Assembly: GCA_020137815.1 (NCBI GenBank)
Contig: CM035356.1
Span: 8,060,001-8,124,000, forward strand
From: Hormiphora californensis
Lineage: Eukaryota; Animalia; Ctenophora
Direction: 5' to 3'
DNA: 64,000 nucleotides
Notes under the pieces: generated by a model
The model's input: the letters and a program-made list of their open reading frames with translations, nothing else
What the model was told of the DNA's origin: nothing
The model's database searches: none
Part shown: piece after piece, positions 41,635-64,000 of the stretch
How the letters are laid out: every line of letters starts with the position of its first letter
Position numbering within the stretch: the stretch's first letter is position 1
Program-made: the position numbers and the translations under genes

Positions 41635-47317
<5,683 letters not shown>

Positions 47318-47699
47318 GGCTGCTGTCATAAGAAAACAGTCTTGTTCGATGTGTTATCTGATTACTGGAATATTTAAATCCCAAGAATTAGGTACGTGTA
47401 CGAGAACAGAGAATTATGTTAGGCGAAAGCGCAAGATTTTTAGGCATCAAAAAATCTCATATCTACCACCAAAATCTGGGACGGAGCTGGCACAGGCCCC
47501 AGCGCGTCCGGAGCCAGCCGCTAAGGTCATGGGGTGTGATACCCCAAAAGCAGGGCCCAGGGTCGCAATTTTGACGTTTTGCGACGATTTAAACCGTCTG
47601 ACAGGCGACAGCGCTTGAAAGTGTAAAGGACAAAAGTGGTAACAAAAAACTGACACAAAAAAAAGGAAACGCGACGTGAAATTTGAAAATAAGAATTTT

Positions 47700-47780
47700 T
47701 TTTGCGAATCGAAAGTGCGCCGCGCGAGAAAATCTTACGCGCGGCGCAAAATTAGTTAATTTTGCATTTTTATCGCGCGT
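47700..47780. promoter_or_regulatory. Putative HELLS promoter with an inverted CGCG motif pair
   Basis: tgcgccgcgcg-agaaaatctta-cgcgcggcgca (47716-47748). Confidence 0.5.
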
Positions 47781-47918
47781 TACAGTTACTTAGCCCAAAG
47801 CGCTGGAGAGGGCTCAAATGGATTGCCAAGACCACCCTGACTTCCAGAGAACCAAAGCGACAAACCAATGCAAACGAAGTTTTTTGGAATGGATAAAAAC
47901 TAAATCACGAATGGCAAT

Positions 47919-48536
47919 TTATTCCTCTTGTTCTTCAACCGGTTGGGGCTGTCTTGAGCTCATAACCTGAGCGGCGATTCTGTCGGCATCCTTTCGTCCC
48001 TGGCTGGTGATCATCCTTCCACCGTCGGGGTGCTTGGCGATCATCTTCAACTCCTCGAGACCCATCAGGGCTTTCCTGATCACGGAGGCAGAGGCCTTTC
48101 GGTGATGGCTGGGGGCGGATCCCATGTTCTTTCGTCCTCCATAGACCTTCCTGAGGGCTCCAGTGCCGACTCCCTGTCGGAGGTACACTCGTCGGAGGAG
48201 GGCAGCAGTCCTGATGTAGTACCAATCGGGACTCTGAGGGAGAGGGAGATCGTTACTAGGAGAGTGGGGGAGAGAGCAGGTTTCGGGGGCAGAAAGGGAT
48301 ATGATCAAGAACTACTAAAAGGTGCTGGAAGTTACCTGAGGGGGCAGCTCTTTGAAGGTAGCGGTCTTGACGATGTCGGTCCAGGCGGGCACGTTCAGCT
48401 TGCCAGACTTCTTCAGGAAAGCAGCGAATTCGGCGACCCACAGCTGAGAGTCAACATCCTTGAGGGTGGTTCCTCCAACGTGTTTCTCCTTGTAAATGTG
48501 CTCCGGGATGGGGCCCAGTGACTGGTAGGTGGCCAT
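47919..48536 (-). CDS. RPS19: 40S ribosomal protein eS19 (exons 48536-48336, 48233-47919)
   Basis: [20 protein letters not shown]|[22 protein letters not shown]. Confidence 0.95.
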
Positions 48537-48719
48537 GTTATGTGCTACTAGACAGAGAGTGGAGGGTTAGACAAAAATGGACTTAGGGGCGGGCAAGGAG
48601 ATGGCTAGTTAGGCATTGAGATATGTCATCGGGTGTATTTTGAGGTGGGTAAGGCAAGACGAATAAAACACAAGGACGTCAATGTAATAAAAACAAAGTG
48701 TAAAAAACACTCCCTTTTC

Positions 48720-49274
48720 TTAACGGTAAGACTTCTGGTATCGTGCTCGGGCTCCGGGACCTCCGAACTTCTTGGGCTCGCACCGCCTGGGATCAGCCAC
48801 CAGCATCGTCTTGTCGTAACTCAGGAGGATGTCCTTGATCTCTTTCTTGCTCGTCTCATCGACAAACTTCTGGTAGTAGGCCACGAGGGACTTGGAGATG
48901 GCCTGTCGGATAGCGTAGATCCTGGCAGTGGAACCACCACCTCGGCACCTCACTCGGATGTCAACTCCCTCGAATCGCTTCTTTCCCAGGAGCAGGACGG
49001 GCTCGAGGACCTTGTACCGGAGGGTGGGAGGCTGGACCAGATCAACTGGAACACCGTTTACCTGGTGAGAGAAGAGGAATTAGGTTAGAAGCCCGTTAGA
49101 AGTAGGTTAAACAGGTTTTCCCTGATTAGTCAATAGCCCGTCAATAGTCATTAGAAAGTAGCAAAACATGAGCTGAGAAATAATACGAACCTTGATCATG
49201 CCATTTCCTTCCTTGGTGTAGGCGACAGCTGTGGCGGTCTTCTTTCGACCGAATACCTGAACAGACTTGACCAT
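48720..49274 (-). CDS. RPS16: 40S ribosomal protein uS9 (exons 49274-49191, 49061-48720)
   Basis: [14 protein letters not shown]...[24 protein letters not shown]. Confidence 0.97.
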
Positions 49275-49469
49275 TCTAAAGACACAGATATTGTTAGGGT
49301 GGTTGTTTAGAAGAGTGGTTAGCAGGAGGAAAAGGGAGGGGAAATATACCAGGGGTGAAGTAGTGAAAACGGGTTATGGGTTGTTACAAAAATAATTGAC
49401 AAACTATACACAATTAGATCAAACAATACACTTCAGCCCAACTAAATTCCGACACATACAGATCTATTT

Positions 49470-50225
49470 TCACTTGACAGGATCTTTGACGTTATCATCA
49501 AAACTGGCATTAATCCACCTATGTAACATTGGGTTCACCCCCGACCACTTATCAACCCCACTCTCCCTCACCCCACCCTTCAACAACCTCAACAACTCAT
49601 CACTGATCGGCTCCGTCTTATCATCATGTACGGTGAGAGCAGCCCCAGCCGGGACTCCCTCTCTCACAGCATCCAAAATGATATCCACCTCAGTTCCGGG
49701 AACTCCGCTAATTCTCAGAACCCGTCGGTGGGTTTTCAGGTAGATGGTTTCATCGAGGTTCTTGGTGTATCTGTTAGCGGGCTTCATGGTGGAGATCTTC
49801 TCTACCGTTGTGGGGAGTGCAACTCGTCCCTCTACTGAACAACCAATCTGGTGGGAGAGAGAGATTGTTACGATAACTAGGAGAGTGAGGGAGATCGTTA
49901 CTGTTGAACAACCAACCTAGTGAGGGGTGGTAAGAAAATAGACCCCAAATGGACCTAGATTGCACCAGTGTAAAGTAAGTGTCCCTAATTTACATAATAA
50001 ACCAACCTGTCGGCAGTAGGTAGAAGTGTGTTTAATGAACCGTTCCAGTTTCACATCATCATGTCCGCTCATATGGAAGTTTAGAGCGAGGGACAGGTTT
50101 GGGGCATCGAATGTCTCCTCGTATGCAATGGGAGTCCTATCACTGGAGATGTAACGAGCAGAGGATGAGGGGAGGGATGAGGATGGAAGGGAGCAGAATC
50201 GTTTACAATATTGTCGGACTAACAT
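49470..50225 (-). CDS. MRPL48: Mitoribosomal protein mL48 (exons 50225-50007, 49847-49470)
   Basis: Presequence-like N-terminus; LNFHMSGHD..ERF, VALPTTVEKI, LKTHRRVLRISGV, VPAGAALTVH match the mL48 uS10-like fold. Confidence 0.75.
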
Positions 50226-50288
50226 TGCGCTAAGAAAGAAAGGAAGGGTTAACATTGTGAAGTATAATAACAGACGATTAAGTATTAA

Positions 50289-51270
50289 GGCCAGAGGGGG
50301 GGGGTCCGGGGGTATAAAAAGTCACTTCCGGTATCTGGTCCGGCTCTTCGAGCCGGACCAGATGACATACTCGGAATCGATTTTGTGTACACTGTTATGG
50401 AGAAAATTGAGGTTAACTTTTGGCCCAAAATCAATGTTAACCTCTCTAATTCTTAGAGTTCGTGTATTGAGACAATGAAAACGGTTCTAAAAGTAAGGTA
50501 TCACTAAGGAGAGTATGTGGGAGCGATTTTATGGCGATATTCCTGGTAGTTCTTTAAATTTTGAGGTTAACATATTTCACCAAAAGTACCTTTTTGGTGA
50601 ATAACTTGGAACATTTTTACGAATCGCCACTACATTCATCTCATAGACGGCTAAGAGTTGGGCCTTGAAATTTGGCAGGCATGATCCTTAGATAATAAAC
50701 TGTGTTTTGAGTGTAACGATTTTTTATTGGAGCCTCCGTTCCCAAGATATTGAGGTTAACGTCTAAAAAATATCAGATGTGAAATATGTTAACCTCAATA
50801 TCTTGGGAACGGAAGCCTCAATCAAAAATCGTTACACTCAAAACACAGTTTATTATCTAAGGATCATGCCTGCCAAATTTCAAGGCCCAACTCTTAGCCG
50901 TCTATGAGATGAATGTAGTGGCGATTCAAAAAGTAAGGTGTGAATAAGACCAAAAAGGTTGTTTTTTGGGCGATAAGTTAACCTCAAACATCCGAACAAC
51001 TATATGGCTTAGACCTCTGAAACTTTGAACATTTGGTCTCCTTGATCAGATCTATCGATTGGTACCATTTTTATCTGTGAAAGCGACATAGATACAAGAT
51101 TTTTGAGGTTAACTTACATTTTCGGTCAAAAGTTAACCTCAAAAAACAGGGCCTCCTGATACACTTGGTGCGCAGCTACCCTATCCAAAAGTTTCCTACC
51201 ACCGAGTTAAATCACATATGTAAACCTCAGAAAAGTACATTTTTTGACCCTCGGACCCCCCCCTCTGGCC
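50289..51270. mobile_element. TTAA-flanked palindromic MITE between MRPS10 and MRPL48
   Basis: ttaa|ggccagaggggggg...ccccccctctggcc|ttaa; near-perfect inner palindrome about 50600-50930. Confidence 0.88.
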
Positions 51271-51392
51271 TTAAATAGGGTGTTTTACAAAATGTACAAA
51301 ATCAAACTAACATTTCACAACTATCTCGCAGTCTCAAATTCCTCAAACACACGTGATGTCCTTATAAGGCATTAATGACCATATTTGGTACT

Positions 51393-54300
51393 TCAATCCA
51401 CCTCTTCATCATCTGCTAACATGTCTTGGTTTGTTGTCTGGTAGTATGTAGAGAGGAAGTCAGTGTTCAGGGGCATCAACTGTTCCTCGGTTACAGCCAT
51501 TGTTACACCTGATCAATTAGGGGATACTAGTTAATTAATTGGGCAATTAATTAAAGCCTCTTTCTACCATCTCGGCGTCAGTTTGCAACGAATATTTCGA
51601 ACAAGAACTTTCCTTGTGTTTTAGTACACATTTCTTATAACCATTCAGTTTCAGACGACTTTTTTTGGTGAACATTTCCAATTTAGGACACAATTTGTCT
51701 TGCCAAGCTAGACTGCCTTTACAAATGTAAAGGGAGGGTTAGAAAATAACAAAATTTGTCATTGTGTGTCCTAATCGATTAGGGCACAATTTGTGTCCTA
51801 AATTCGAAAATGTTGGGGGGGGGGGGGGGGGGCGTCACCTTTTATTTTGCCCATATTTGCCCATATTTGCCCATATGGGCAAAAGTGAATTTTCAAAAAT
51901 CGTGGGACTTTGTAATACATGTGATTAGGGTAAGGACCAGGAATTTTGGGGGGGCAAGCTAATTCCTTCACTAATAGTTAGTCTAAAGGGTCCTTATGGG
52001 GGGGGGGGGGGCCAAGGCCAAAAAAAGCCAGATCAATCCCGGATTTTAGGGCGGGTTTGGCTTTTTTTGGCTTTTTTTGGCCCTACTTTTTTGGTCATTT
52101 TGGCATGTAATTCTGACATTATATGGTCTGTATGGCACTAAAAACACTTTAAAATGGCTTCTTTGATCTAGTTTTATCATTTTACATCGATAGTGAAATA
52201 ATATTTTTACCGAAAAAAGTTTGATTTAAAAAAAGCCAGATCAAAAAAAGCCATATCAAAAAAAGCCAAAAAAAGCCAGATCAAAAAAAGCCAAAAAAAG
52301 CCAGATCAAAAAAAGCCAGATCAAAACTGCCAAATCAAAAAAAGCCAGATCAAAAAAAGCCAAAAAAGGCCAAAAAAAGCCAGATCAAAAAAAGCCAGAT
52401 CAAAAAAAGCCAAAAAAAGCCAGATCAAAAAAGCCAGTTCAAAAAAAGCCAAAAAAAGCCAGATCAAAAAAAGCCAGAAAAAGCCAGATCAAAAAAAGCC
52501 AGATCAGACCCGGATTTCAGGGCGGGTTTGGCTTTTTTTGGCCTTGGCCCCCCCCCCCTTATTCACCAAAAAAAAGTTTTAAATCTGAAGTGGTGGGGAA
52601 GACCTCTATAATTGGCCTTAATTGGCGGTAATTGGGTATTCCCCTAACTTGGCTTAGAAATGGAGTAGAGACAAAAGTAAGGACACTAAAATGTGTAGAA
52701 TCATCACATTATAGGGGGTAGAGACCATTACTGAGTCGATATCTCCAATACTAATTGATATAATTGAGTTAATTGGATAATTCATGCCGCGCATGGTTGC
52801 CAAATACAAATCGTCTTAGAATAGGAGTAGAAATGAAAATAGGGACACTAAACTGTGCAGCGTCCTCGCATTAGTGGGGGTAGACACCCATGAAAAGTTC
52901 CTATCTCAATTTGTTAATTGGATAATTGGATAATTAGATATGTGCATAGCCGTATTAGCCTATTAGATACTCAGCAGACCATATATACGATACACCCCTA
53001 GTACCCTCTTAAACACCCCTCAGACCCTGCTAGATACCTATTAAACTCCATTAGATGCCCCTCGAAGCTTCCTAGATAGCCCTTACAGCTCATTGGGTAA
53101 CCCTTCTACCGTCCTATACACCCCTCAGACCCTGCTAGATGCATTTTAGATCTTCCTAGATACCCCTAAAACTCTCCATGATACACATTAGACTGTACTA
53201 GATACCCCTTAGACCCCGTTAGATACCCCTAAAATCCTTCTAGATACCCCTCAGATCTTCATAGATACCCCTAGTACCTTCCTGGGCACTCCTCAGATCT
53301 CAGACCATATAAGATACCAATCAAACATCATTAGATACCCCTCACAGCTCCCTAGATACCTTCACAGCTCCTTAGATAGCCATTTTACCCCTCTAGATAC
53401 CCATCAGACCCTGCTAGATACATATCAGATCTTGCTAGATACCCCTGAACTCCCAAAGATACCCCCAGAAATCAGAATCTGCTAGATTCATACCCCCTTA
53501 GACCCCATTAGATATCTGTCAGACCATTCTAGATACCCCTCCAGCTCCTTAGATAAGCCTATTACCATCCAAGACACCCCTCAGACCCTGGGCTTCTTAG
53601 ATACCCATTACACCCTATTAAATACCCTTCAAGCAAGAGCTTCCTAGATACCCTAATAGACTCCCAGATACCCCTGGGCCCTGAAACCCTCCATTAGATA
53701 GCGCTCTGAGGAGTGAAGGGTGTCTAGGAAGCTCTGAGGGGTATCTAGAAGGATCTGAGGGGTATCTGATGGTGTAGGGTTAAGGGTGTATACTATACAC
53801 TGTATAGTAGAGTCGGATACCTGTAGGCTGTAAGACCCTTCAAGATACCCTTCAGAGCTTCATACCTGACCCTGGGCCTACTAGATACCCATCATACCCT
53901 ATTAGATGCCCCTCAAGCCTCAATGCAAAGCTTTATATACATACCCCTCACAGCTCCTATTAATCCTATTAGCCTCCTAAACACCCCTCAGACTTTGATC
54001 TACCGAACCCTCCCAAGGGGTGTGAGCCACACAACGCAGACCCTACTAGATACCCCTAAAACCCTCCAAGATACCTGTCCGACTCTACTATATACCCCTT
54101 AGACACTATCAGATACCCCTCAGATCCTTCTAGATACCCCTCAGAGCTTCTTAGACACCCCTCAGACCTCAGAGCACTATCTAATGGAGGGTTTCAGGGG
54201 TATTGGGGTATCTAGGAGTCTATTAGGGCGTCTAAAAAGCTGTGAGGGGTATCTAGGAAGCTCTTGAGGGGTGTAATGGGTATCTAACAAGCCCATGGTC

Positions 54301-56372
54301 TGAGGGGTATCTAGGAGGGTAACAGGCTTATCTAAGGAGCTGGAGGGGTATCTAGAAGGGTCTGACAGATATCGAATGAGGTCTAAGGGGGTTTCTAGTA
54401 GCTACTGGGGGTATCTTTTGGGGGTTCAGGGGTACCTAGCAAGATCTGATATGGTTCTAGCAGGGTCAGATGGGTATCTAGAGGGGTAAAATGGCTATCT
54501 AAGGAGCTGTGAAGGTATCCATGAAGATCTGAGGGGTATCTAGAAGGGTTTTAGGGGTATCTAACGGGATCTAAGGGGTATCTAGTACAGTCTAATGTGT
54601 ATCATGGAGAGTTTCAGGGGTATCTAGGAAGATCTAAAATGCATCTAGCAGGGTCTGAGGGGTGTATAGGACGGTAGAAGGGTTACCCAATGAGCTGTAA
54701 GGGCTATCTAGGAAGCTTCGAGGGGCATCTAATAGAGTGTAATAGGTATCTAGCAGGGTCTGAGGGGTGTTTAAGAGGGTACTAGGGGTATGTAGGAGGC
54801 TCTTAGAATCTCAGTGTATCGTATATATAATGGTCTGCTGAGTATCTAATAGGCTAATACGGCTATGCGCATATCTAATTATCCAATTATCCAATTAACC
54901 AATTGAGATAGGAACTTTTCATGGGTGTCTACCCCCACTAATGCGAGGACGCTGCACAGTTTAGTGTCCCTATTTTCATTTCTACTCCTATTCTAAGACG
55001 ATTTGTATTTGGCAACCATGCGCGGCATGAATTATCCAATTAACTCAATTATATCAATTAGTATTGGAGATATCGACTCAGTAATGGTCTCTACCCCCTA
55101 TAATGTGATGATTCTACACATTTTAGTGTCCTTACTTTTGTCTCTACTCCATTTCTAAGCCAAGTTAGGGGAATACCCAATTACCGCCAATTAAGGCCAA
55201 TTATAGAGGTCTTCCCCACCACTTCAGATTTAAAACTTTTTTTTGGTGAATAAGGACCCTTTAGACTAACTATTAGTGAAGGAATTAGCTTGCCCCCCCA
55301 AAATTCCTGGTTGGCCCGATTATTTACCCAAATCACATGTATTATTGGGCTAAATGGGCAAAAATGGGCAAAAAAATAACTCCTGTACCTTACATCATAG
55401 ATAGGTTTATAGCCACTATAATCGAAGCAGAATTTCACGCTGAGGAAGATGCTTGTATTTATTTTGTTCTAGGACGTTTCTAAAACCCATTAAAGCCAAA
55501 AAACCTAAAAAACCTAAAAAATCCTAAATTTAGGATTTGACCACTAAAAACAATTTGACTACTAATTAGACACCTAAGACCATTCTGACCGAGTTTTTAA
55601 GAGATGACATCAAGGTATAGAGTTGAAAAAAGGACATATAACACTGAAATTTCATTTTGCCCATTTTTGCCCAATTTTGCCCATTTTGCCCATATGGGCA
55701 AAACCAAAATTCGCTGGGATTATGGGCAATGGGCAAAAAAAAGGTGACGCCCCCCCCCCAAAATGTTATAATCCTACCTGCGGGAATGTTTCGCTGCACG
55801 TAGGCCAGATACACATCAGCAGTTGTCCCAGAAATATCATTCAATATCAACTTCCTATTCCAGATATCTCGTTTAAACCGGTCCTTGTGCTTTCCATGAA
55901 CATGGGGTGACCGGTTAACTGTGTACACCCCCGTAACGAGTTTCCCATTTTGTAACTCTGTTTTGATCCTCAGGCAATGTGCTGCAAAGTTGGCGAACAC
56001 TAGGTAACTACGGAGGGTATTGTAACAGCTTCCCTTGACGCTGAGAACGAGTCTGCTGATACACCGCTCACCGTCACCTCCTGATATCTCAACCTAGAGG
56101 GGGGGGGGAGGAGGGGTAATGTCAGTAATTGAGGTTAACATGGGGTTAACGGGGTTAACAGCTGCAGAACAATACTATCACAAGGGGAATGTTTCCAACA
56201 ACTATGAAATGGAAAGTGTAGTAAAACTACTTACAGGGAGGGCAGCTTTCTCCAGACTTCCAGGGTCATCCAGAACGAACTGTTTGGGACTAAGGGTTTT
56301 CTTGTGGAGGATGTTTCGGTACGGGTTTATAGTGTCATACCTAGGAAGGGGAGTGTTACAATCTGGGACCTA

Positions 56373-56423
<51 letters not shown>

Positions 56424-56654
56424 GTAGAGAGAGGGAGAGAAACAAGTATCTCACCGCATATCTCCCCTGTCCTCTTCTGTTCTAAATTCAGCCCTTCTCA
56501 GTTTCCTCTTTCTACTGAGAGAAAGGACACCACCCTTCTCTGGATCAGAAATTAACTTCTTGGGTGCAACTTCAGAGGTGCCAACACGAGATGAGAGATG
56601 GCGGGTCAGTGGGGCGCTTTCCCGTGTACAGATCAGTCTCGTTAAGTTGAACAT
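51393..56654 (-). CDS. MRPS10: Mitoribosomal protein uS10m (4 exons; last intron about 4.3 kb)
   Basis: NRSPHVHGKHKDRF, ISGTTADVYLAYVQRNIPAG|VTMAVT; presequence-like start MFNLTRL. Confidence 0.85.
51815..55759. mobile_element. About 3.9-kb foldback element with poly-G/poly-C termini in the last MRPS10 intron
   Basis: aaaatgtt|Gn-cgtcacc...ggtgacg-Cn|aaaatgtt (8-bp TSD); kb-scale inverted arms with tagatacccc subrepeats. Confidence 0.85.
51997..52556. mobile_element. Nested poly-G-ended element with aaaaaagccagatc repeats
   Basis: ccttat|Gn-ccaaggcc...ggccttgg-Cn|ccttat; the empty site is visible in the opposite arm (about 55240-55265). Confidence 0.8.
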
Positions 56655-56862
56655 GTTAGCTAGAGCGGGTAATTAGTTAATTAGAGCTTTAATTACAATA
56701 ATTAATCAGTTAATTAGAGCCTTAATTGCACTAATTAATTAGGTTTAACTTCACCAAAGAAAAGAAATTGATAAAGGTATTATCTTTAACCCAAAGAAAA
56801 TCTCCATAAACAAATCTAGCCCACATATATTAAAAGCACACAACACGTACAACGTGTTTATA

Positions 56863-56971
56863 CAGTCAAACCTCGATTAACCGGACTATAACATTGATTT
56901 ACCGAACTCCTCAAGTGGAAAATGGAAATGATTTTGTACGGCATAGGTCCCGGTAAATCGAGGTCTGACTG
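56863..56971. mobile_element. Tigger/pogo-type MITE; degenerate relative at about 21401-21468
   Basis: ta|cagtcaaacctcgatt...aatcgaggtctgactg|ta. Confidence 0.85.
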
Positions 56972-57120
56972 TATTTCTAATACCAAGCTAGTAAAAAACA
57001 TACTATTTACAGATACAGTAACACACAAGTTTTGAAATTATTTCACCTCATGCGCTTTGGAATGGGGAGGTAATGAAATGAAAAAAAGAAAGAATAACCC
57101 CGGCCCGGCGTTGACGTCAT

Positions 57121-59447
57121 CTAGATGGTCTCTTGAGATGAGAAGCTGGGGTATTTTGAGGTGGCTTCAGACCATGCTAGCTGATCGGAACACAGTTGAT
57201 TTACCACACTGGCTACCTCGTCAAGGGGCACTCGGATCTGAAGAGAGGAGATTTAGTACACAGATGCAATGGGGTATTAGCGTTCACTGATCGTACACTT
57301 CAGGTGAAAGTAGTCAGAGATCTGGGCCACACAGCCACGGCTGGTCAGTGGTCACGTGATAAAATCAGATCTGAATGTGAATCTCACCTGGGTACACGTG
57401 TTTCTCTCTCTCACAGTGACGGAATTCAACTTGACTGTATCGAAATCAACTGTGATGCCGAAGGGGATTCCAATTTCATCAGTTCGAGCGTACCGTCTGC
57501 CGATAGCCCCAGAAGAGTCGTCAACCTGGAGTGGAGTGACGTTAATAATTTCGACGTGGCGGGGAAAAGTTAGACATCGTTGAATAAAGATTTGGTAAGG
57601 AAATTCTTTGTTATGTTCTAACCCTCCCTTTAAGTGAGAGGCTCGCGGAAGGCAGTCTAGCTTGACAAGGGAATTCTATATCTGGAGGAGATGGCTCTAC
57701 TTTGACAACATAGTGAGAGGTGTATGACGTCACAGATTAGTGACGTCACGTAATTACCTTATTAGGGATGCCCAGTTTCCTCAGACTGGCACTGATCTGC
57801 TCGATGTAAGGGGTAAACACGTCGTTAGAGGAGAGAGGCAGAACGGAGCACTTGGTGGGAGCGATTAGAGGGGGTAGGTCCAACCAAGTTCTCTTCTCGT
57901 CTGATTCTCGAACCTGTAGTGAGAGATTCATTGTTTTGAATGTCCAATAGAACACAAGGAAAGTTTATATCCTGGATATCTGAGTACACACAGTGAGATA
58001 TCGCAATTACATTTTAATTTATAAAAATCTTTTTAGTGGAGGGTCCAACCCCCCCGCAAAATGAACGTGATAGAAGAGGGGTGGTATAGAGGATGATATA
58101 ATTTGGCCCTAATTTTCTGGGTTCTTAAGCTTATCCAAAAGGCTTTTCATGATCTCTTTACTGTTTATTAGGCTTTACCTAGGCATAATTGATCTAACTT
58201 CATGACTTTGTAATATCATTTTCATTTAGAAATTTTCTAATGTATGATTAAAAAAAGGCCAGATCAAAAACAAAAGGCCATAGTAAAGAATTATAGTAAA
58301 GAATTCAGAATACACATGTACATACTACCAATTAGAACACAAGGAAAGTTCCTATCCTGGATATCTGAATACACACAGTGGTATTCAAAAAATAGCTTGA
58401 AATAATTCAAAATCTTTTTAGTGGAGGGTCCAACCCCCCGCACTTATATCAGGGTATCACTTGGTGAGGTATCAATCTTTTCATAATTACCTTGAAATTA
58501 CACTCCAAGATACAGTAGAGAATCCTACCAATGCCAAAGGAGGGCTCAATCACACTGGGGACAAACTCTCGGACGTGCTCTGTTTTAGTGACTGTCTTCA
58601 CACCACTAATCATGGCGGGAGTCACTTCGTAGGAGTTATCTCCAACTGTTAACTGAAAAGAAGAGAGATTTACATTTCATTTTGAGGTTAACGACACAAT
58701 GTTGATGTTTATCTGGCGTTTGTCAGTTAGAAAATGTAACACACATACCTGGTAAGACCCACTCTCCAACTGAGCCTTCATCTCCTCCTTCTGCTCATCA
58801 CTCAACTCAGCGATGGCTGCACTCACTTTACCAGCCTCCTTCTTGAACGCTTTACCAAGGATTGCCTTGTTCAGGCTAACCTCCGTAACCTCCCTAGAGA
58901 CGGGCTCATGCAAGGCGCTGCTGGGCTACAAACTTGGTAGATGCCGCCTGGGAGGGGGGCGTGTTAGCATATAGTAGGAGACATGAGAGGAACTGATACT
59001 AAACTGGTTGGGGCGTTTGTACCAAGAGATGAAAGGGGGGGGGGGGCATGAATTGTTAGACAGATGTTACAGTACTAAAAGGGAGGGGGGTATTGGCTCC
59101 ATGTTTCTGAACCACCCTGTATCTGGAGAAATATCCTACCTTTGCATGGGCGTTAAGATCAAAACAGCTCCTATCAGCACACCCCACTATCTCGACCCAT
59201 CCATAGGTAGTTAGACATTCAGCATCCCAGCAGTCACAGGCGTAATGTGCCATCTCGTTCCCCATGTGTTGCCTGAAGCGCAGTTTCTCGGCTGGTATCC
59301 CCACAGAGGTAAGATATTGTTGGATTCGTGCCAGGAAATAACCCATCGTCTCACTGTTTATCACTCCCTGGTGGATGGGGGTTAGAAATTGGGTTTGAAA
59401 GAGGGGGAATTGTGGATTATTATCATCATATTGCATTGTGTATTTTA

Positions 59448-59495
<48 letters not shown>

Positions 59496-61000
59496 AGAGA
59501 GAGAGATAAAGAGAGAGAAATATTAACCTGTTCAAGTGCCTCCCCGATGGTAATATTGAGGAGTTTACCCCCTGATACTTGTGCTTCTCCAGAGTACATG
59601 GTAACAGGGACGTTCTTGACCAGCTTAAACTTGGGGTGAGACTTGTCTTGGGGATCCAAAAAGTGCTCAATTTCAGCCTGGAAAAAGAGATGTTAGGGAA
59701 GAATAGAGATGTTACAAGATAGGACAACACGAGATATGACCAAATATGGTGTTATTATGTGACCAAATATGGTATCAACATACCTGGCAGAATTCTCGAA
59801 CTCGTAACAGCCCAGATCGGGGTGAAATCTCATTCCTGAATGACTGGCCAATCTGTGCCCCGGCAAAGGGTACCTTGTCCTGGTTATATTCTAGTAGTCG
59901 CTTGAAATTCACAAAGATACCCTGAAATTAAATCTCACGTTACCATGGTTACACCACGGGAGGGTGTGTCACTGACAGAATAAGAGCAGATGATGAAAAG
60001 TGGAAAAACAGTTGTGACTCACCCCTCCCCCAAATAAAATCAAAGACACCCAAGATTTTACCTGTGCAGTTTCGGGCCTCATGAATCCCCTCAACAGTCC
60101 AGTGGGTCCTATCTGTGTTCCAAACATAAGATTAAACTCAGCTGGATCGCTCAAATCATTCCCAGTAGCAGGTGCTTTACACTCATACTTTCTGATGAAC
60201 CCTCCAATCTCCTCCAGACCATAATTATCAATCTGCCTTAGCACCGCCTCCATCTCCTCCTTCTTCTCGACAGTACACCCCTTGGCCTCAATCGCCTTCT
60301 CTAGATGGGCCTCCAGCAAGTGATCCGCTCTGTAACACTCTCCCGTCTTGACATCCTTCACCATGAAGTCAGTGAACCTGTCAACATGGCCCGATGCTTT
60401 TAACACATATTCAGGTGTTAACATGGTACATTCCACCTCTAACATGTTCTCTTCCACTACAAAATGGTTCCTCCAGTAATTCACCATGTTGGCCTTCAGG
60501 GCACATCCAGCCGGCCCTAGATCGTATAACCCTGCTACTCCACCGTAGACGGAGAAGGCAGCACCGTAGAAAAACCGTCGCTTCATCAGGTTTTCAAACT
60601 TGGCCCGGTCCACTTTTGGAGATCCATCTTTTGCTGCTTTCTCAGCGGTGGCCAAGGCCGCTTTCCTGATCTTGAGTTCCTCAACAGCAGATGCAAGTTC
60701 ATCGGGAGAGGGATTGCTTTCTTTGAGCTTCCTAACTGCAGCGCCTTGGTCCGCAACCGCTGTCCTCAGGTCATCCATGGACACGGTACTACTGGGCATG
60801 CTAGGAGAGGTGGATATGAGTCTTGTGGTGGGAGGAAGGGTGGATATCAGTCTCGTACAGAGAGGAAGGGTGGATATCAGTCTTGGACAGGGAGGTTGGG
60901 AGAAGGAGCGAGGTATAGGAGGTTGGATAGAACGGGGTCTTGAACAGGAGATGGGAGAGAACCTTGATATGAGGCGTTTTGCTAGGAGGGTTGCTAGCAT
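57121..61000 (-). CDS. GARS1: Glycyl-tRNA synthetase, eukaryotic alpha2 type, with presequence and WHEP domain; about 9 exons, one apparent +1 indel near 58914
   Basis: [73 protein letters not shown]. Confidence 0.95.
57945..58443. repeat. About 110-bp imperfect direct repeat in a GARS intron
   Basis: tagaacacaaggaaag...gtggagggtccaacccccc at about 57948 and 58334. Confidence 0.75.
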
Positions 61001-61184
61001 ATAAGCATGCTAAAATAGGAAATCAAGGGGGTAAATTTTAATATATCCGGGAAATAACTTTGCAAATTGCAACGAAAATAAAATTAATTAGATAAACCAA
61101 TCATCCTCTCTGAACCATTTCACCCAAAACCACACTCACTCACCCACACACAGACAGACAAACACACTACCTATTCTTGACACG

Positions 61185-63291
61185 CTACATGGACGTCTCA
61201 ACCCGTTTAACTAAGTCCTTCAGAAGCGGCATCAGATCCGTCTCAGGTAGGTATTCACACTTGTTGAGATAGAGTGCTATACACAGAGTGTGTTTTACAT
61301 TGTCACTGTTAATCCACACCCGGCCATTGATACCAACACATATCTCGAACAGTTTGAAGTGTGCAAAAAGGGGCTCTAGGAGGGGCAGGGGCCGCTCGTG
61401 GCGGAGCAGCTTTCGACAGAGACCGAGTGAGCAGTTTACCAGGTAGCCTCCCTCTAGAACCTGAGAGAGAAGGGTCAAATACAAGCAAGGCTGGGGCACT
61501 ACCACTTTCAGGGAGAGAGAAGTAAAATAAGGAAATATTGAAACTTGAACGACGTTAATTTCTAACCAGGGAGCATTAGGTAAGTAATTAGGGATTATAA
61601 TAATAGGGGAACTGACCTGTAGTCCGTTAGATTTCCCGTTCTTGTGAACACAAGACAGCTCTGGCTCAACATCCTTATTAGCAGCTACAACTTTACCATA
61701 CACTAAATTACCAATCTAACAAAAAGGGACGTGTGTTAGAGAAGTTAACCCTAACAAAGCGCCAACAGGATATGTGTTAGATTGTTATGTTCTAAACCTC
61801 CTTCCGGAGCGCACGGAAAGAGGGTCGAGCAAGGGAAGTGTTAGAGGGGTACTGGGACAAAAGGGGGGGGGGACAAAAGCTGCAGGACAGGAAGCGAGAC
61901 AGTAAGAGCTGAAGAGTGTTTACCTTCAAGTCAGGTTTGTTTCGTTGTGTAGCCCCCTCAAACGCGATACTACTCATCATAGCATGGTGGGCTCCACCTA
62001 TATCCACCCTGTATTCGTCTGCCATTCGACCCGCTATGATTCCTATTACTCGTTCTTCAAGCGCGGGAACATACCTGGACGAGAGGGAGATTTAGAACGA
62101 GAGAGGGACGGAGAGAGAGAGAGAGAGATGGGGAGGGAGAGGAGGGGGGCCGGCTGAAGTTTTTGAAGTTTTTGAAGTGAACTTCAAAAACTTCAAAGAG
62201 AAACTTAGGGTGGAAAACTTCAAAAACTTCAAAAACTTCAAAAACTCATATCTCCTTAACCGTTGGAGATATGCCCTATGTTGCTTCATAACTCGTATAT
62301 AAAGTTGCATATTCCGAACAAGATACACCCCTTTAAAAAGCCTATAGTCACTCATAAACCATTAAAACTGGTCTAGCCCAAAAAAGTCATGCGCACACAC
62401 AAAATTATGAAAATATCCCATTATCCCTCGAATTAGATGAGGTGGAGACTTCATTTTGGCACGTACCCCCACTAACTCGAGGCCGCTGATGATTTTAGTG
62501 TCCATATTTTTTTCACTACTCCCTTCATAAAAAATTTGCATTTTGTGAAACTGGCAAAAAGGGTGTGGCCCCAAAAAAAATTTTGAAAATTTACTTTATA
62601 ATTTTTTTAACACTTTCTTAGCATTTTCTAGGCAATTTTTTGAGTTATAGAATGAAAATAAAATCAGTTTTTACAAAAAATTTAAACTTTTTACACCAAA
62701 TTGTGCCATGGATTTCACGGCTAGGAATCATTGTAAATATCCTAATTTGCGGTGGAAAAAGGGCAGACAAGGACGGATAACTTTGCCACACTATGTATTA
62801 AGCATGAAACTAACCTAAACAAGTGTAATAATAGTCACTGATAGCATATAAAAGTAGTTTAGAGTTTTTGAAGTTTTTGAAGTTTTTGAAGTCAACTTCA
62901 AAAACTTCAAAAACTCAAAAAGTAGGGTGGAAAACTTCAAACTTCAAAAACTTCAGCCGGCCCCCCCCCCCGAGGGAGAGAGAGAGACGAGTTTAGATGG
63001 TACTGGTAAGTTTGGGATAGATCAACATGTGATAACCCTAAAATGTACCAGACTGTACAATAGTAGGGGATGAAATGGGTTATGAAATGTTCACACATAC
63101 CTCCTACTGTTTCTGTCAATCCAAACTGATTTCCCAGTTGACCTAATAACACCAGGTTTTGTACAACTAATCTGATCGTTGATGTATCTCAATCCTGGAC
63201 CCACTTTCAGGTTCTTATCTTTGGGGAGAGAGAAAGTGTCTCCACACATGACAATAGCAGGGGAGGGCGGTAGAGACCTCCCCGTCTCCAT
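61185..63291 (-). CDS. EXOSC3: Exosome component Rrp40 (4 exons)
   Basis: VGPGL, WID.NSRR|YVP, YRVDIGG, AFEGATQRNKP, EPELSC, GINGRVW. Confidence 0.92.
62141..62971. mobile_element. Poly-G/C-ended TIR element with tttttgaag subterminal repeats in EXOSC3 intron 1
   Basis: gagggaga|g(g)aggggggccggctgaag...cttcagccggCn|gagggaga. Confidence 0.8.
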
Positions 63292-63384
63292 ATCTTGATA
63301 ACTTGGCTAGAAGGGGAAGGTGAGAGGTCAGGTATCTGGATATAACAGATCACATATCTGAGGCGGGGGAGACAGCTCTAAGAA

Positions 63385-63480
63385 GAGGGCGCGCGGCGCG
63401 AAACACTACCGAAAAAGTGTTTACTCGCTTTAAGTTTAAAGTTCCTACACAGTGCGAATATTCGCGCGTGCGCACCAGTC
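63385..63480. promoter_or_regulatory. CGCG-motif promoter upstream of EXOSC3 (head of the putative operon)
   Basis: gcgcgcggcgcgaaa at about 63389 and ttcgcgcgtgcgc at about 63461. Confidence 0.5.
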
Positions 63481-64000
63481 TCCCCTAACTGTGGCAATGT
63501 CGGTCACAAAATCCTGCAGTTACACGCACAACAGAAGGGACAGCTGCAACCGCTGTCGAAAGTTCACTTTTTCAAACAATTCGGGCAAGCAAAAGTCGGG
63601 AAAAAGAGAGAGACAAAATAAACTATTCATGACCATCAAGGAATCGGCAAAAAGTAGTCTCAGCTGGCAACATATGGCCCTACGAATACACTACATTAAT
63701 ACATAACACGGCCAATTTGCAGTACAAAACCTGAAACGATAAGTGATATCGAATGTTCACACAACATTCAATCGGGATGTTTAATAAGATACACCATACA
63801 AGTTTAGAGGTTTAGTTACTGCTTGGAAAACAGGTCTGAGTAATGCAAAATGAATTATATGTTAAAAAGCTGAAAACAACCAGGACGCAAGGGTTACTAA
63901 ACAAACTTCCAATAATTTAGAGTGGGACAGGGTGGACACTATTTCACCTGCATTAAGTGTATTACTGACAGCATGTGGACCTGCACAAGTAACAATATGA

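What the first reader, a model, noticed from the sequence alone, without database searches (positions are those of the whole stretch)
47919..63480. Candidate six-gene SL-trans-spliced translation operon: EXOSC3-GARS-MRPS10-MRPL48-RPS16-RPS19
Seen: six minus-strand genes, all for ribosomes, tRNA charging or rRNA processing. Stop-to-ATG gaps are 184, 466 (about 355 without a MITE), 1167 (about 181 without a MITE), 195 and 183 bp. Each ATG has a pyrimidine tract and AG 1-15 nt upstream (AG at 63308, 61011, 56661, 50231, 49277, 48549/48546), mostly with a ctaac/ctgac-like branch site, and no strong donor in the short gaps. CGCG clusters occur only before EXOSC3 and after RPS19. Known: SL trans-splicing occurs in ctenophores, and nematode/tunicate operons are enriched for growth genes. 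Inference: one polycistron co-regulating cytosolic and mitochondrial translation with near-fixed spacer length.
Basis: partly seen in the sequence, partly recalled or inferred. Interest (0 to 1): 0.88.

Follow-up and report, generated by a model that had tools for sequence, protein, structure and literature searches.

The report
Candidate comb-jelly six-gene translation operon
Six same-strand genes for ribosomes, tRNA charging and rRNA processing sit almost end to end in a comb-jelly genome; at least two of their mRNAs receive the spliced leader exactly where predicted and the core trio stays linked in other comb jellies, so this is a credible but still unproven operon in a phylum where none has been reported.

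Summary
Pfam and PDB searches confirm RRP40/EXOSC3, GARS, MRPS10, MRPL48, RPS16 and RPS19 on the minus strand. Stop-to-ATG gaps are 184, 466, 1167, 195 and 183 nt. The 1167-nt gap holds a 985-bp dispersed repeat, which leaves 182 nt.

The genome matches Hormiphora californensis. Contigs from four marine RNA studies carry the 3' end of its published spliced leader (SL) joined at AG 48549/8 (RPS19, three printed, a fourth implied). Two studies show it at 49277/6 (RPS16). A relative's MRPL48 contig ends at 50231 with 22 unmatched letters. The RPS16 poly(A) site lies about 130 nt before the RPS19 acceptor.

MRPL48, RPS16 and RPS19 are also neighbours in Mnemiopsis, Bolinopsis and Pleurobrachia. 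CGCG-rich, promoter-like DNA flanks the cluster but is absent from all five gaps. In a 14-gene ribosomal-protein survey, the 10 genes without CGCG all lie 177-774 nt behind a same-strand gene.

Co-transcription is not shown. No contig bridges a gap, and the SL marks at least 56% of this species' mRNAs, so it is not diagnostic. RPS16/RPS19 also look far more abundant than their upstream neighbours.

Verdict: operon-type organisation is likely (about 0.55); one strict six-gene polycistron is less so (about 0.3). The scan has flagged about 100 similar clusters elsewhere in this genome.

The parts
63390..63468 (-). CGCG/CpG-rich promoter-like block 82-157 nt upstream of the EXOSC3 acceptor. It contains a TTTCGCGC (E2F-type) word.
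   Evidence: 19 CpG in 292 nt, against 2-4 per roughly 190-nt gap. The same kind of block lies upstream of the 'head' ribosomal-protein genes RPS8, RPL21 and RPL37Ab.
61185..63306 (-). EXOSC3/RRP40 gene. Four exons: 63306-63101, 62074-61924, 61715-61617, 61460-61185. ATG at 63291, stop at 61187-61185.
   Evidence: Pfam Rrp40_N, RRP40_S1 and KH_6. Exon borders read.
63307..63308 (-). Predicted SL acceptor AG of EXOSC3. The resulting 5' UTR would be 15 nt.
   Evidence: Sequence context only. Not covered by the reads call.
61001..61184 (-). Gap 1, EXOSC3 stop to GARS ATG: 184 nt, no CGCG, 3 CpG. It holds GTGAGT donor-like words at 61143 and 61139.
57121..61009 (-). GARS (glycyl-tRNA synthetase) gene. 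ATG at 61000, a short upstream ATG at 61008, stop at 57123-57121. Predicted SL acceptor AG at 61011/61010.
   Evidence: WHEP-TRS, tRNA-synt_2b and HGTP_anticodon. Human GlyRS at E=2e-90. Acceptor context; not tested by reads.
56655..57120 (-). Gap 2, GARS stop to MRPS10 ATG: 466 nt, 14 CpG, no CGCG. It holds a 113-nt hairpin (56861-56973) and a 2 x 33-nt TAATTA-rich repeat (56670-56735) directly before the acceptor AG 56661/56660.
51393..56659 (-). MRPS10 gene. ATG at 56654, stop at 51395-51393. The last intron, 55777-51509, was confirmed by RNA contigs.
   Evidence: Pfam Ribosomal_S10. In one search the loose end at 51511 equals the exon sequence ending at 55778. Relatives found.
50226..51392 (-). 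Gap 3, MRPS10 stop to MRPL48 ATG: 1167 nt. Positions 50290-51274 are a dispersed 985-bp repeat that ends 59 nt upstream of the acceptor.
   Evidence: at least 30 full copies, 77-97% identical.
49470..50229 (-). MRPL48 gene. Acceptor AG at 50231/50230, ATG at 50225, intron about 50021-49848, stop at 49472-49470.
   Evidence: Weak Ribosomal_S10 match. Full-length ctenophore relatives of 191-196 aa with PF00338. In one search, X2 record 10 (a relative, about 93% identical) ends at 50231 with 22 unmatched letters.
49275..49469 (-). Gap 4, MRPL48 stop to RPS16 ATG: 195 nt, 2 CpG, no CGCG, pyrimidine-rich (0.62) like the introns.
48682..49275 (-). RPS16 (uS9) mRNA body. SL acceptor AG at 49277/49276, ATG at 49274, intron 49188-49062, stop at 48722-48720, poly(A) site about 48677-48684.
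   Evidence: SL letters were printed behind 49277 in runs X2 and X4. The joint 49059/49189 appears in all four runs. A poly-T loose end sits before 48682 (X1), and contigs end at 48682-48714.
48537..48719 (-). Gap 5, RPS16 stop to RPS19 ATG: 183 nt, about 130 nt from the RPS16 poly(A) site to the RPS19 acceptor. No CGCG, no donor-like word.
47880..48547 (-). RPS19 (eS19) mRNA body. SL acceptor AG at 48549/48548, ATG at 48536, intron 48335-48234, stop at 47921-47919, 3' end at 47880-47888.
   Evidence: SL letters were printed behind 48549 in X1, X2 and X4. X3's contig has 24 unmatched letters there. The joint 48233/48336 appears in all four runs.
47670..47779 (-). CGCG cluster (7 CGCG) between the RPS19 3' end and the next minus-strand gene, a HELLS-like SNF2 helicase with ATG at 47329. 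This is the likely promoter of that next gene and the downstream boundary of the cluster.
   Evidence: 36 CpG in 550 nt; SNF2-rel_dom.

Best explanation
This is an operon-type gene cluster of the kind resolved by spliced-leader trans-splicing. RNA polymerase II probably starts at the CGCG/CpG-rich block near 63.4 kb and reads through several, perhaps all, of the six genes. Each upstream mRNA is released by cleavage and polyadenylation about 35-40 nt after its stop codon. Each downstream mRNA gets its capped 5' end by trans-splicing of the 44-nt leader onto an AG 1-15 nt before its ATG.

Shown: the SL junctions of RPS19 and RPS16, the 3' ends of both, the cis introns, the lack of CGCG in every gap, and conserved linkage of the core trio.

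Inferred: co-transcription itself, the position of the promoter, and SL use by EXOSC3, GARS and MRPS10.

I put co-transcription across the tight junctions (EXOSC3 to GARS; MRPL48 to RPS16 to RPS19) at about 0.55. A single promoter serving all six genes is about 0.3. The rest of the 0.55 allows for internal promoters (a 'hybrid' operon), most likely in the 466-nt gap or the repeat-bearing gap.
For: 1. SL junctions at the predicted acceptors. The loose ends read ...CTACTTTAAACAAATTAATTTG followed by the AG at 48549 (printed in three studies, unmatched letters in a fourth) and at 49277 (printed in two studies). This is identical to the 3' end of the published H. californensis leader (PMC8527503), which is present in the genome followed by GT.

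2. The RPS16 poly(A) site at about 48680 lies only about 130 nt before the RPS19 acceptor. That is close to the roughly 100-nt spacing I recall for nematode operons.

3. Four of five gaps are 182-195 nt after discounting a proven repeat insertion. By the working definition used for chaetognath operons (under 250 bp plus an SL on at least one gene; PMC12460157), EXOSC3-GARS and MRPL48-RPS16-RPS19 qualify.

4. CGCG clusters and high CpG occur only at the two ends, and no gap holds a single CGCG.

5. Genome-level control on 14 cytosolic ribosomal-protein genes. Ten have no CGCG in the gap or within 600 nt upstream, and all ten lie 177-774 nt behind a same-strand coding gene. The four with CGCG include the three that have no close upstream neighbour (Fisher p about 0.011).

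6. No shared ribosomal-protein-specific upstream motif appears in the gaps, only branch-site-like TCTAACC.

7. The 985-bp repeat sits 59 nt from the MRPL48 acceptor. This is tolerated if the gap is merely transcribed spacer.

8. Linkage is conserved. In M. leidyi the locus tags are G002993 (MRPL48), G002994 (RPS16) and G002996 (contains RPS19), all on one contig. In Bolinopsis, RPS19 and RPS16 have consecutive accession numbers on one contig. A Pleurobrachia gene model fuses MRPL48 directly to RPS16. MRPS10 fragments share contig lengths with MRPL48 and RPS16 relatives.

9. The gene content fits the housekeeping bias of known metazoan operons (PMC12460157).
Against: No contig bridges any gap in four RNA runs; bins 49308-49441 have zero depth. 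These are mostly oligo-dT metatranscriptome assemblies, which would rarely keep precursors.

SL trans-splicing is generic here, on at least 56% of mRNAs. All 12 other ribosomal-protein genes have the same AG-ATG layout, including ones with their own CGCG promoter.

RPS16 and RPS19 contigs were present in all four runs at depths of 5-80. Same-species MRPL48 contigs were absent, and MRPS10 pieces were few and mostly from relatives. The tool warns that depth is a poor measure. If the difference is real, it needs either an internal promoter or large differences in mRNA stability.

Gap 2 is 466 nt with intermediate CpG content. Gap 1 carries GTGAGT donor-like words.

The CGCG block is only a sequence proxy for a promoter. 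In Mnemiopsis an Era-like GTPase is fused upstream of RPS19, so the RPS16-RPS19 junction is not invariant.
Confidence: 0.55

Rival explanations
1. Six separate transcription units. Each gene has its own compact, CpG-poor promoter inside the roughly 130-450 nt between the upstream poly(A) site and its acceptor. SL trans-splicing only trims a very short outron. The genes stay together through inertia, shared chromatin or short shared regulatory DNA, not through a common transcript.
For: The SL is not diagnostic, since at least 56% of mRNAs carry it and the AG-ATG layout is universal among ribosomal-protein genes. RPS16 and RPS19 appear much more abundant than MRPL48 and MRPS10 in four runs, as expected if they have their own strong promoters. 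No bridging RNA was seen. Gap 2 is long enough for a promoter.
Against: Only about 130 nt would have to hold a terminator zone, a promoter, a start site and an outron with branch site and pyrimidine tract. No CGCG or CpG enrichment occurs in any gap, while 'head' genes, including ribosomal-protein genes, do have it. No shared ribosomal-protein motif is found in the gaps. A 985-bp repeat 59 nt from the MRPL48 acceptor would have cut a gap promoter off. Linkage is conserved over three further genera.
Confidence: 0.33
2. The strict version of the reader's claim: one promoter, one 15.5-kb six-cistron precursor, with a spacer length held nearly fixed by selection.
For: CGCG blocks occur only at both ends. 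Four gaps are 182-195 nt. RPS3A elsewhere has a 177-nt gap.
Against: The apparent abundance gap between the two cytosolic ribosomal-protein genes and the four upstream genes. The 466-nt gap 2, whose 'MITE' is unconfirmed. A tolerated 985-bp insertion and other same-strand pairs with gaps of 241-774 nt show that the length has a floor and is not fixed.
Confidence: 0.3
3. Read-through transcripts are cis-spliced from donor-like sites in the upstream 3' UTR (GTGAGT at 61143/61139, GTATGT at 49459) to the downstream acceptor. This would give mature bicistronic mRNAs, or non-coding first exons, rather than SL-capped monocistrons.
For: Donor-like words lie in gaps 1 and 4. Gene predictors fused MRPL48 to RPS16 in Pleurobrachia and an Era-like gene to RPS19 in Mnemiopsis.
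Against: RPS16 contigs in two studies carry the SL at 49277, not upstream exon sequence. Fused models are a common annotation artefact at SL acceptors.
Confidence: 0.07

Closest known systems
Caenorhabditis elegans SL2-type operons
   Same: Co-oriented genes. Roughly 100-130 nt between the upstream poly(A) site and the downstream trans-splice acceptor. Very short 5' UTRs after trans-splicing. Enrichment for mitochondrial and gene-expression machinery genes. The nematode features are from general knowledge of the system.
   Different: No sign of a dedicated downstream leader. RPS16 and RPS19 carry the same leader 3' end as the general published SL. The phylum is Ctenophora. Precursors have not been shown.
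Chaetognath (Paraspadella gotoi) operons, PMC12460157
   Same: Defined as same-strand genes under 250 bp apart with an SL on at least one gene. No operon-specific leader. Housekeeping bias; the longest operon mixes ribosomal-protein, ubiquitin and proteasome genes. Two blocks here meet that definition.
   Different: An independent lineage with an unrelated leader. Here two junctions exceed 250 bp (466 and 1167 nt).
Tunicate (Ciona, Oikopleura) operons
   Same: SL-resolved clusters of housekeeping genes with a single leader type (general knowledge).
   Different: As I recall, Ciona operons have almost no intercistronic spacer. Here there is a floor of about 130 nt between the poly(A) site and the acceptor.
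Kinetoplastid polycistronic transcription units
   Same: mRNA levels of neighbouring cistrons can differ greatly through post-transcriptional control. That is what a single-promoter reading would require here.
   Different: Those units hold tens to hundreds of unrelated genes, and every mRNA is trans-spliced. Here promoters (CGCG blocks) recur every 1-15 kb.

Membership tests
SL-resolved eukaryotic operon | Two or more co-oriented protein-coding genes with short intergenic spacers | tested here: met
   Six minus-strand genes. Gaps are 184, 466, 1167 (182 without the repeat), 195 and 183 nt.
SL-resolved eukaryotic operon | Downstream mRNAs begin with the spliced leader joined at an acceptor just upstream of the ATG | tested here: met
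   Met for RPS19 (48549) and RPS16 (49277) in independent RNA studies, and probable for MRPL48 (50231). Not tested for GARS, MRPS10 or EXOSC3, because the single reads call covered only 47700-51700.
SL-resolved eukaryotic operon | A polycistronic primary transcript spans the intergenic spacers | tested here: inconclusive
   No contig bridges a gap in four runs. These are assembled, mostly poly(A)-selected metatranscriptomes that drop rare precursors. No further reads call was allowed.
SL-resolved eukaryotic operon | One promoter upstream of the first gene and none before the downstream genes | tested here: inconclusive
   Sequence proxy only. CGCG/CpG blocks lie at 63390-63465 and 47670-47776 and none lie in the gaps. 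The proxy is backed by the 14-gene ribosomal-protein survey. No TSS or chromatin data are available.
SL-resolved eukaryotic operon | Gene linkage conserved among related species | tested here: met
   MRPL48, RPS16 and RPS19 are neighbours in Mnemiopsis (locus tags G002993, G002994, G002996). RPS19 and RPS16 have consecutive accessions in Bolinopsis. MRPL48 is fused to RPS16 in a Pleurobrachia model. EXOSC3 and GARS could not be tested.
Nematode SL2-type operon | A specialised leader (SL2) used for downstream genes | tested here: not met
   The 19-27 leader letters seen on RPS16 and RPS19 equal the 3' end of the general published leader. The 5' half of the leader was not visible.
Chaetognath-style operational operon (PMC12460157) | Same-strand genes under 250 bp apart, with at least one carrying an SL | tested here: met
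   MRPL48-RPS16-RPS19 (195 and 183 nt, SL on two genes). EXOSC3-GARS is 184 nt apart but its SL was not tested.

The most novel reading that the evidence does not exclude
Ctenophores, probably the sister group of all other animals, have true SL-resolved operons. This cluster would be a conserved 'translation operon' whose MRPL48-RPS16-RPS19 core predates the split between cydippids and lobates. Most cytosolic ribosomal-protein genes of this species (10 of 14 sampled) would be promoter-less downstream cistrons fed by the promoters of unrelated upstream genes, with their high mRNA levels set after transcription.
Probability: 0.45. Interest if true: 0.8.

Novelty: new variant of a known kind. Interest (0 to 1): 0.62.

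Why it matters
[quoted passage not shown] The H. californensis genome paper (PMC8527503) describes ubiquitous leaders but never mentions operons. My later literature searches also found nothing.

If co-transcription is confirmed, it would add another phylum in which trans-splicing goes together with operons, in a lineage that matters for reconstructing early animal genome regulation. It would explain why gene predictors fuse neighbouring genes in ctenophore annotations. It would also raise a concrete question: how do ribosomal-protein mRNAs reach very high levels from promoters they share with low-abundance genes?

The locus is a good test case. The junctions are now mapped to the base, and three short gaps can be bridged by simple RT-PCR.

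Tried and rejected
Synteny had to be inferred from locus tags, consecutive accessions, fused gene models and shared contig lengths.

MRPL48 exon 2 found no relative. The RPS16 query found only other eukaryotes at 77% identity or less.

3. The RPS16 protein search returned mostly non-ctenophore hits. It became useful only through the later cluster look-up.

4. The MRPS10 representative search gave unnamed singletons, so the M. leidyi MRPS10 locus tag could not be read.

5. The hairpin in gap 2 taken as a MITE had no second copy.

6. Rfam found nothing in 46000-64000.

7. A k-mer search for a shared promoter motif in ten ribosomal-protein gaps found only the branch-site-like TCTAACC, at a level shuffles also reach.

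8. Most genomic copies of the leader are heads of retrocopies, not leader genes. I did not pursue the leader genes.

9. Spliced coding sequences were never joined.

10. The single read-laying run covered 47700-51700 only. The acceptors at 56661, 61011 and 63308 remain untested.

Full report
**What is there**

The region 47,880-63,470 of the window carries six minus-strand genes. Pfam on exon-sized open frames gives the following:
- Rrp40_N, RRP40_S1 and KH_6 (EXOSC3/RRP40)
- WHEP-TRS, class-II core and HGTP_anticodon (GARS)
- Ribosomal_S10 (MRPS10, and weakly the paralogue MRPL48)
- Ribosomal_S9 (RPS16/uS9)
- Ribosomal_S19e (RPS19)

The first GARS exon matches human glycyl-tRNA synthetase at E=2e-90. 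Full-length ctenophore relatives of MRPL48 (191-196 aa, PF00338) exist. All searches were run exon by exon by reference.

**Geometry**

The stop-to-ATG gaps are 184, 466, 1167, 195 and 183 nt (the MRPL48 ATG is at 50225). Positions 50290-51274 in the third gap are a dispersed repeat with at least 30 full-length copies at 77-97% identity. The original gap was therefore about 182 nt.

The 113-nt hairpin in the second gap has no other copy in the genome search.

Every ATG has an AG 1-15 nt upstream, behind a pyrimidine tract and CTAAC-like words.

**Which organism**

The assembly has 110.7 Mb in 45 contigs. This fits the published Hormiphora californensis genome of 110 Mb in 44 scaffolds with 13 chromosomes (PMC8527503).

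That paper gives a 44-nt leader ending ...CTACTTTAAACAAATTAATTTGAG, found on at least 56% of Iso-Seq reads. It says nothing about operons. The same 3' leader sequence occurs in this genome about 400 times. Most of the copies I looked at are heads of retrocopies, as earlier notes of the scan had said.

**RNA evidence**

I had one reads call and used it on 47700-51700, with contigs from four marine RNA studies.

- RPS19. Contigs in all four runs cover 47880-48233 and 48336-48549. In X1, X2 and X4 they then continue with letters whose reverse complement is ...CTACTTTAAACAAATTAATTTG. X3's contig has 24 unmatched letters at the same place.
- RPS16. Contigs end at 49277 with the same letters in X2 and X4.
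- MRPL48. A contig from a relative (about 93% identical) ends at 50231 with 22 unmatched letters. That is the same length as the leader stub on RPS16 in that run. The letters were not printed, so I call this junction probable.
- 3' ends. RPS16 ends at about 48677-48684 (a poly-T loose end), roughly 40 nt after its stop and about 130 nt before the RPS19 acceptor. RPS19 ends at 47880-47888.
- Introns. Both cis introns were confirmed, and so was the 4.3-kb last intron of MRPS10.
- No contig enters any gap.

**Why the leader alone does not make an operon**

I located 12 further cytosolic ribosomal-protein genes in the same genome by Pfam six-frame search and fetched 3 kb upstream of each. All 12 have an AG 0-14 nt before the ATG. 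This layout is generic in this species.

**A promoter proxy**

In the window, clusters of CGCG occur at nine places. Two of them bracket the six genes, at 63390-63465 and 47670-47776. No single CGCG lies in any of the five gaps. CpG counts are 2-4 per short gap, against 19 in the 292 nt before EXOSC3 and 36 in the 550 nt after RPS19.

The ribosomal-protein survey gives this proxy some weight.

Genes with CGCG words upstream:
- RPL21, RPL37Ab and RPS8 have CGCG clusters 120-530 nt upstream.
- RPL19 has one CGCG.

Genes with none, each lying behind a same-strand coding gene (distance from that gene's stop to the ATG):

| Gene | Distance (nt) | Upstream same-strand gene |
|---|---|---|
| RPS3A | 177 | 338-aa ORF, no Pfam |
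| RPL27 | 241 | UBX (weak match) |
| RPL37Aa | 262 | its tandem twin RPL37Ab |
| RPL34 | 326 | RNase PH exosome subunit |
| RPL24 | 401 | 842-aa ORF, no Pfam |
| RPS4 | 457 | peptidase M3 |
| RPL15 | 548 | nucleoside diphosphate kinase |
| RPS17 | 774 | acidic ribosomal protein P1/P2 |

Adding RPS16 and RPS19, 10 of 14 ribosomal-protein genes are CGCG-less followers. The four with CGCG include the only three that have no close same-strand neighbour (Fisher p about 0.011). The ten follower gaps share no ribosomal-protein-specific motif; the only recurrent word is the branch-site-like TCTAACC.

This pattern is what polycistronic transcription predicts. It is still indirect.

**Conservation**

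I therefore used cluster membership.

- Mnemiopsis leidyi: MRPL48, RPS16 and an RPS19-containing model carry locus tags ACHWQZ_G002993, G002994 and G002996 on one 15.9-Mb contig.
- Bolinopsis microptera: RPS19 and RPS16 are XP_063684620 and XP_063684621 on one 20.1-Mb contig.
- Pleurobrachia bachei: a 314-aa model is MRPL48 fused directly to RPS16.
- MRPS10 fragments sit on ENA contigs whose lengths equal those holding an MRPL48 relative (128,869 nt) and an RPS16 relative (236,140 nt).
- The Mnemiopsis RPS19 model is fused to an Era-like GTPase. In Hormiphora that GTPase lies on another chromosome. The cluster has therefore gained or lost members.
- EXOSC3 and GARS linkage could not be tested.

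**Weighing**

In favour of operon-type transcription:
- exact leader junctions;
- about 130 nt between a mapped poly(A) site and the next acceptor;
- four gaps at a floor of 182-195 nt;
- promoter-like DNA only at the ends, backed by the genome-wide survey;
- a repeat insertion tolerated 59 nt from an acceptor;
- conserved linkage;
- a gene set typical of metazoan operons.

Two blocks meet the working definition used for chaetognath operons: same-strand genes under 250 bp apart with a leader on at least one gene (PMC12460157).

Against:
- no bridging RNA;
- a leader that is not diagnostic;
- a 466-nt gap with intermediate CpG content;
- the apparent excess of RPS16/RPS19 mRNA over MRPL48/MRPS10 in all four runs (with the tool's caveat about depth). 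One shared promoter could produce that only with strong post-transcriptional control.

I therefore rate co-transcription across the tight junctions at about 0.55, a strict six-gene single-promoter unit at about 0.3, and fully independent units at about 0.33.

**Novelty**

[quoted passage not shown] Later literature searches found nothing.

The scan itself has about 100 first-stage notes of operon-like runs in this genome. One follow-up, on a DMC1 cluster, reached a similar 'credible but unproven' verdict.

This report adds base-level leader junctions, a mapped poly(A)-to-acceptor distance, cross-genus linkage for this cluster, and the ribosomal-protein promoter survey.

Noticed in passing
window 62870-64000 plus L091:1-1392, copied at L091:3300-5863 (about 4.4 kb further upstream): A second copy, 97% identical, of the EXOSC3 promoter block, exon 1 and the start of intron 1. 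A retroelement RT-like ORF (L091:1506-3275, minus strand) lies between the copies. The upstream copy has several 1-nt deletions in exon 1 and has lost the GT donor. It is either a decayed duplicate or an unpolished haplotype left in the assembly.
   Followed up: partly
window 52557-55255, inside the last MRPS10 intron: A large foldback structure. The outer arms (52557-52982 and 54830-55255) are 426 nt and 100% complementary. The inner arms are 98% complementary and are built of 21-nt tandem units.
   Followed up: no
window 49470-56654: MRPS10 and MRPL48, both with the uS10 fold (PF00338), lie in direct tandem. They also share contigs in Mnemiopsis-like assemblies. This may preserve the original tandem duplication.
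   Followed up: partly
window 61000-61011: After the predicted GARS acceptor the 5' UTR reads cATGcttatATG. The short upstream ATG is out of frame with, and overlaps, the main start. The first 70 codons look like a mitochondrial presequence containing three 30-nt repeats (60803-60892).
   Followed up: no
window 56670-56735: Two 33-nt TAATTA-rich tandem units lie directly before the MRPS10 acceptor, in place of a normal pyrimidine tract. Similar TAATTAA words precede the last MRPS10 cis acceptor at 51520-51550.
   Followed up: no
L125, L129, L120 (upstream of RPS3A, RPL27 and RPL15 in the same genome): The 60-100 nt before the acceptor of several ribosomal-protein genes consist of two or three tandem copies of a unit that holds a TAAC branch-like word, for example ccatgttaacacccc repeated three times. 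This could be a trans-splicing enhancer layout.
   Followed up: no
G000:C1:8390574-8391366: Two RPL37A copies lie in direct tandem, 262 nt apart from stop to ATG. Only the upstream copy has a CGCG cluster.
   Followed up: partly
G000:C9:7523400-7526650 and C5:5271800-5275000: Further translation-themed same-strand pairs: an RNase PH exosome subunit gene 326 nt before RPL34, and acidic ribosomal protein P1/P2 774 nt before RPS17.
   Followed up: partly
P0151 (M. leidyi KAL5269356.1); G000:C2:9488083-9489013: The Mnemiopsis gene model fuses an Era-like GTPase (MMR_HSR1) to RPS19. The Hormiphora orthologue of that GTPase is on another chromosome, so the cluster's content differs between genera.
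   Followed up: partly
window 45626-47329 and 47670-47776: The next minus-strand gene is a HELLS-like SNF2 helicase (SNF2-rel_dom, E=3e-69). It sits behind its own CGCG cluster and has no convincing acceptor directly before its ATG.
   Followed up: no
window 61139-61148 and 49459: Consensus donor-like words (GTGAGT twice, GTATGT once) lie in the 3' UTR zones of EXOSC3 and MRPL48. They could allow cis-splicing of read-through RNA onto the next gene's acceptor.
   Followed up: no
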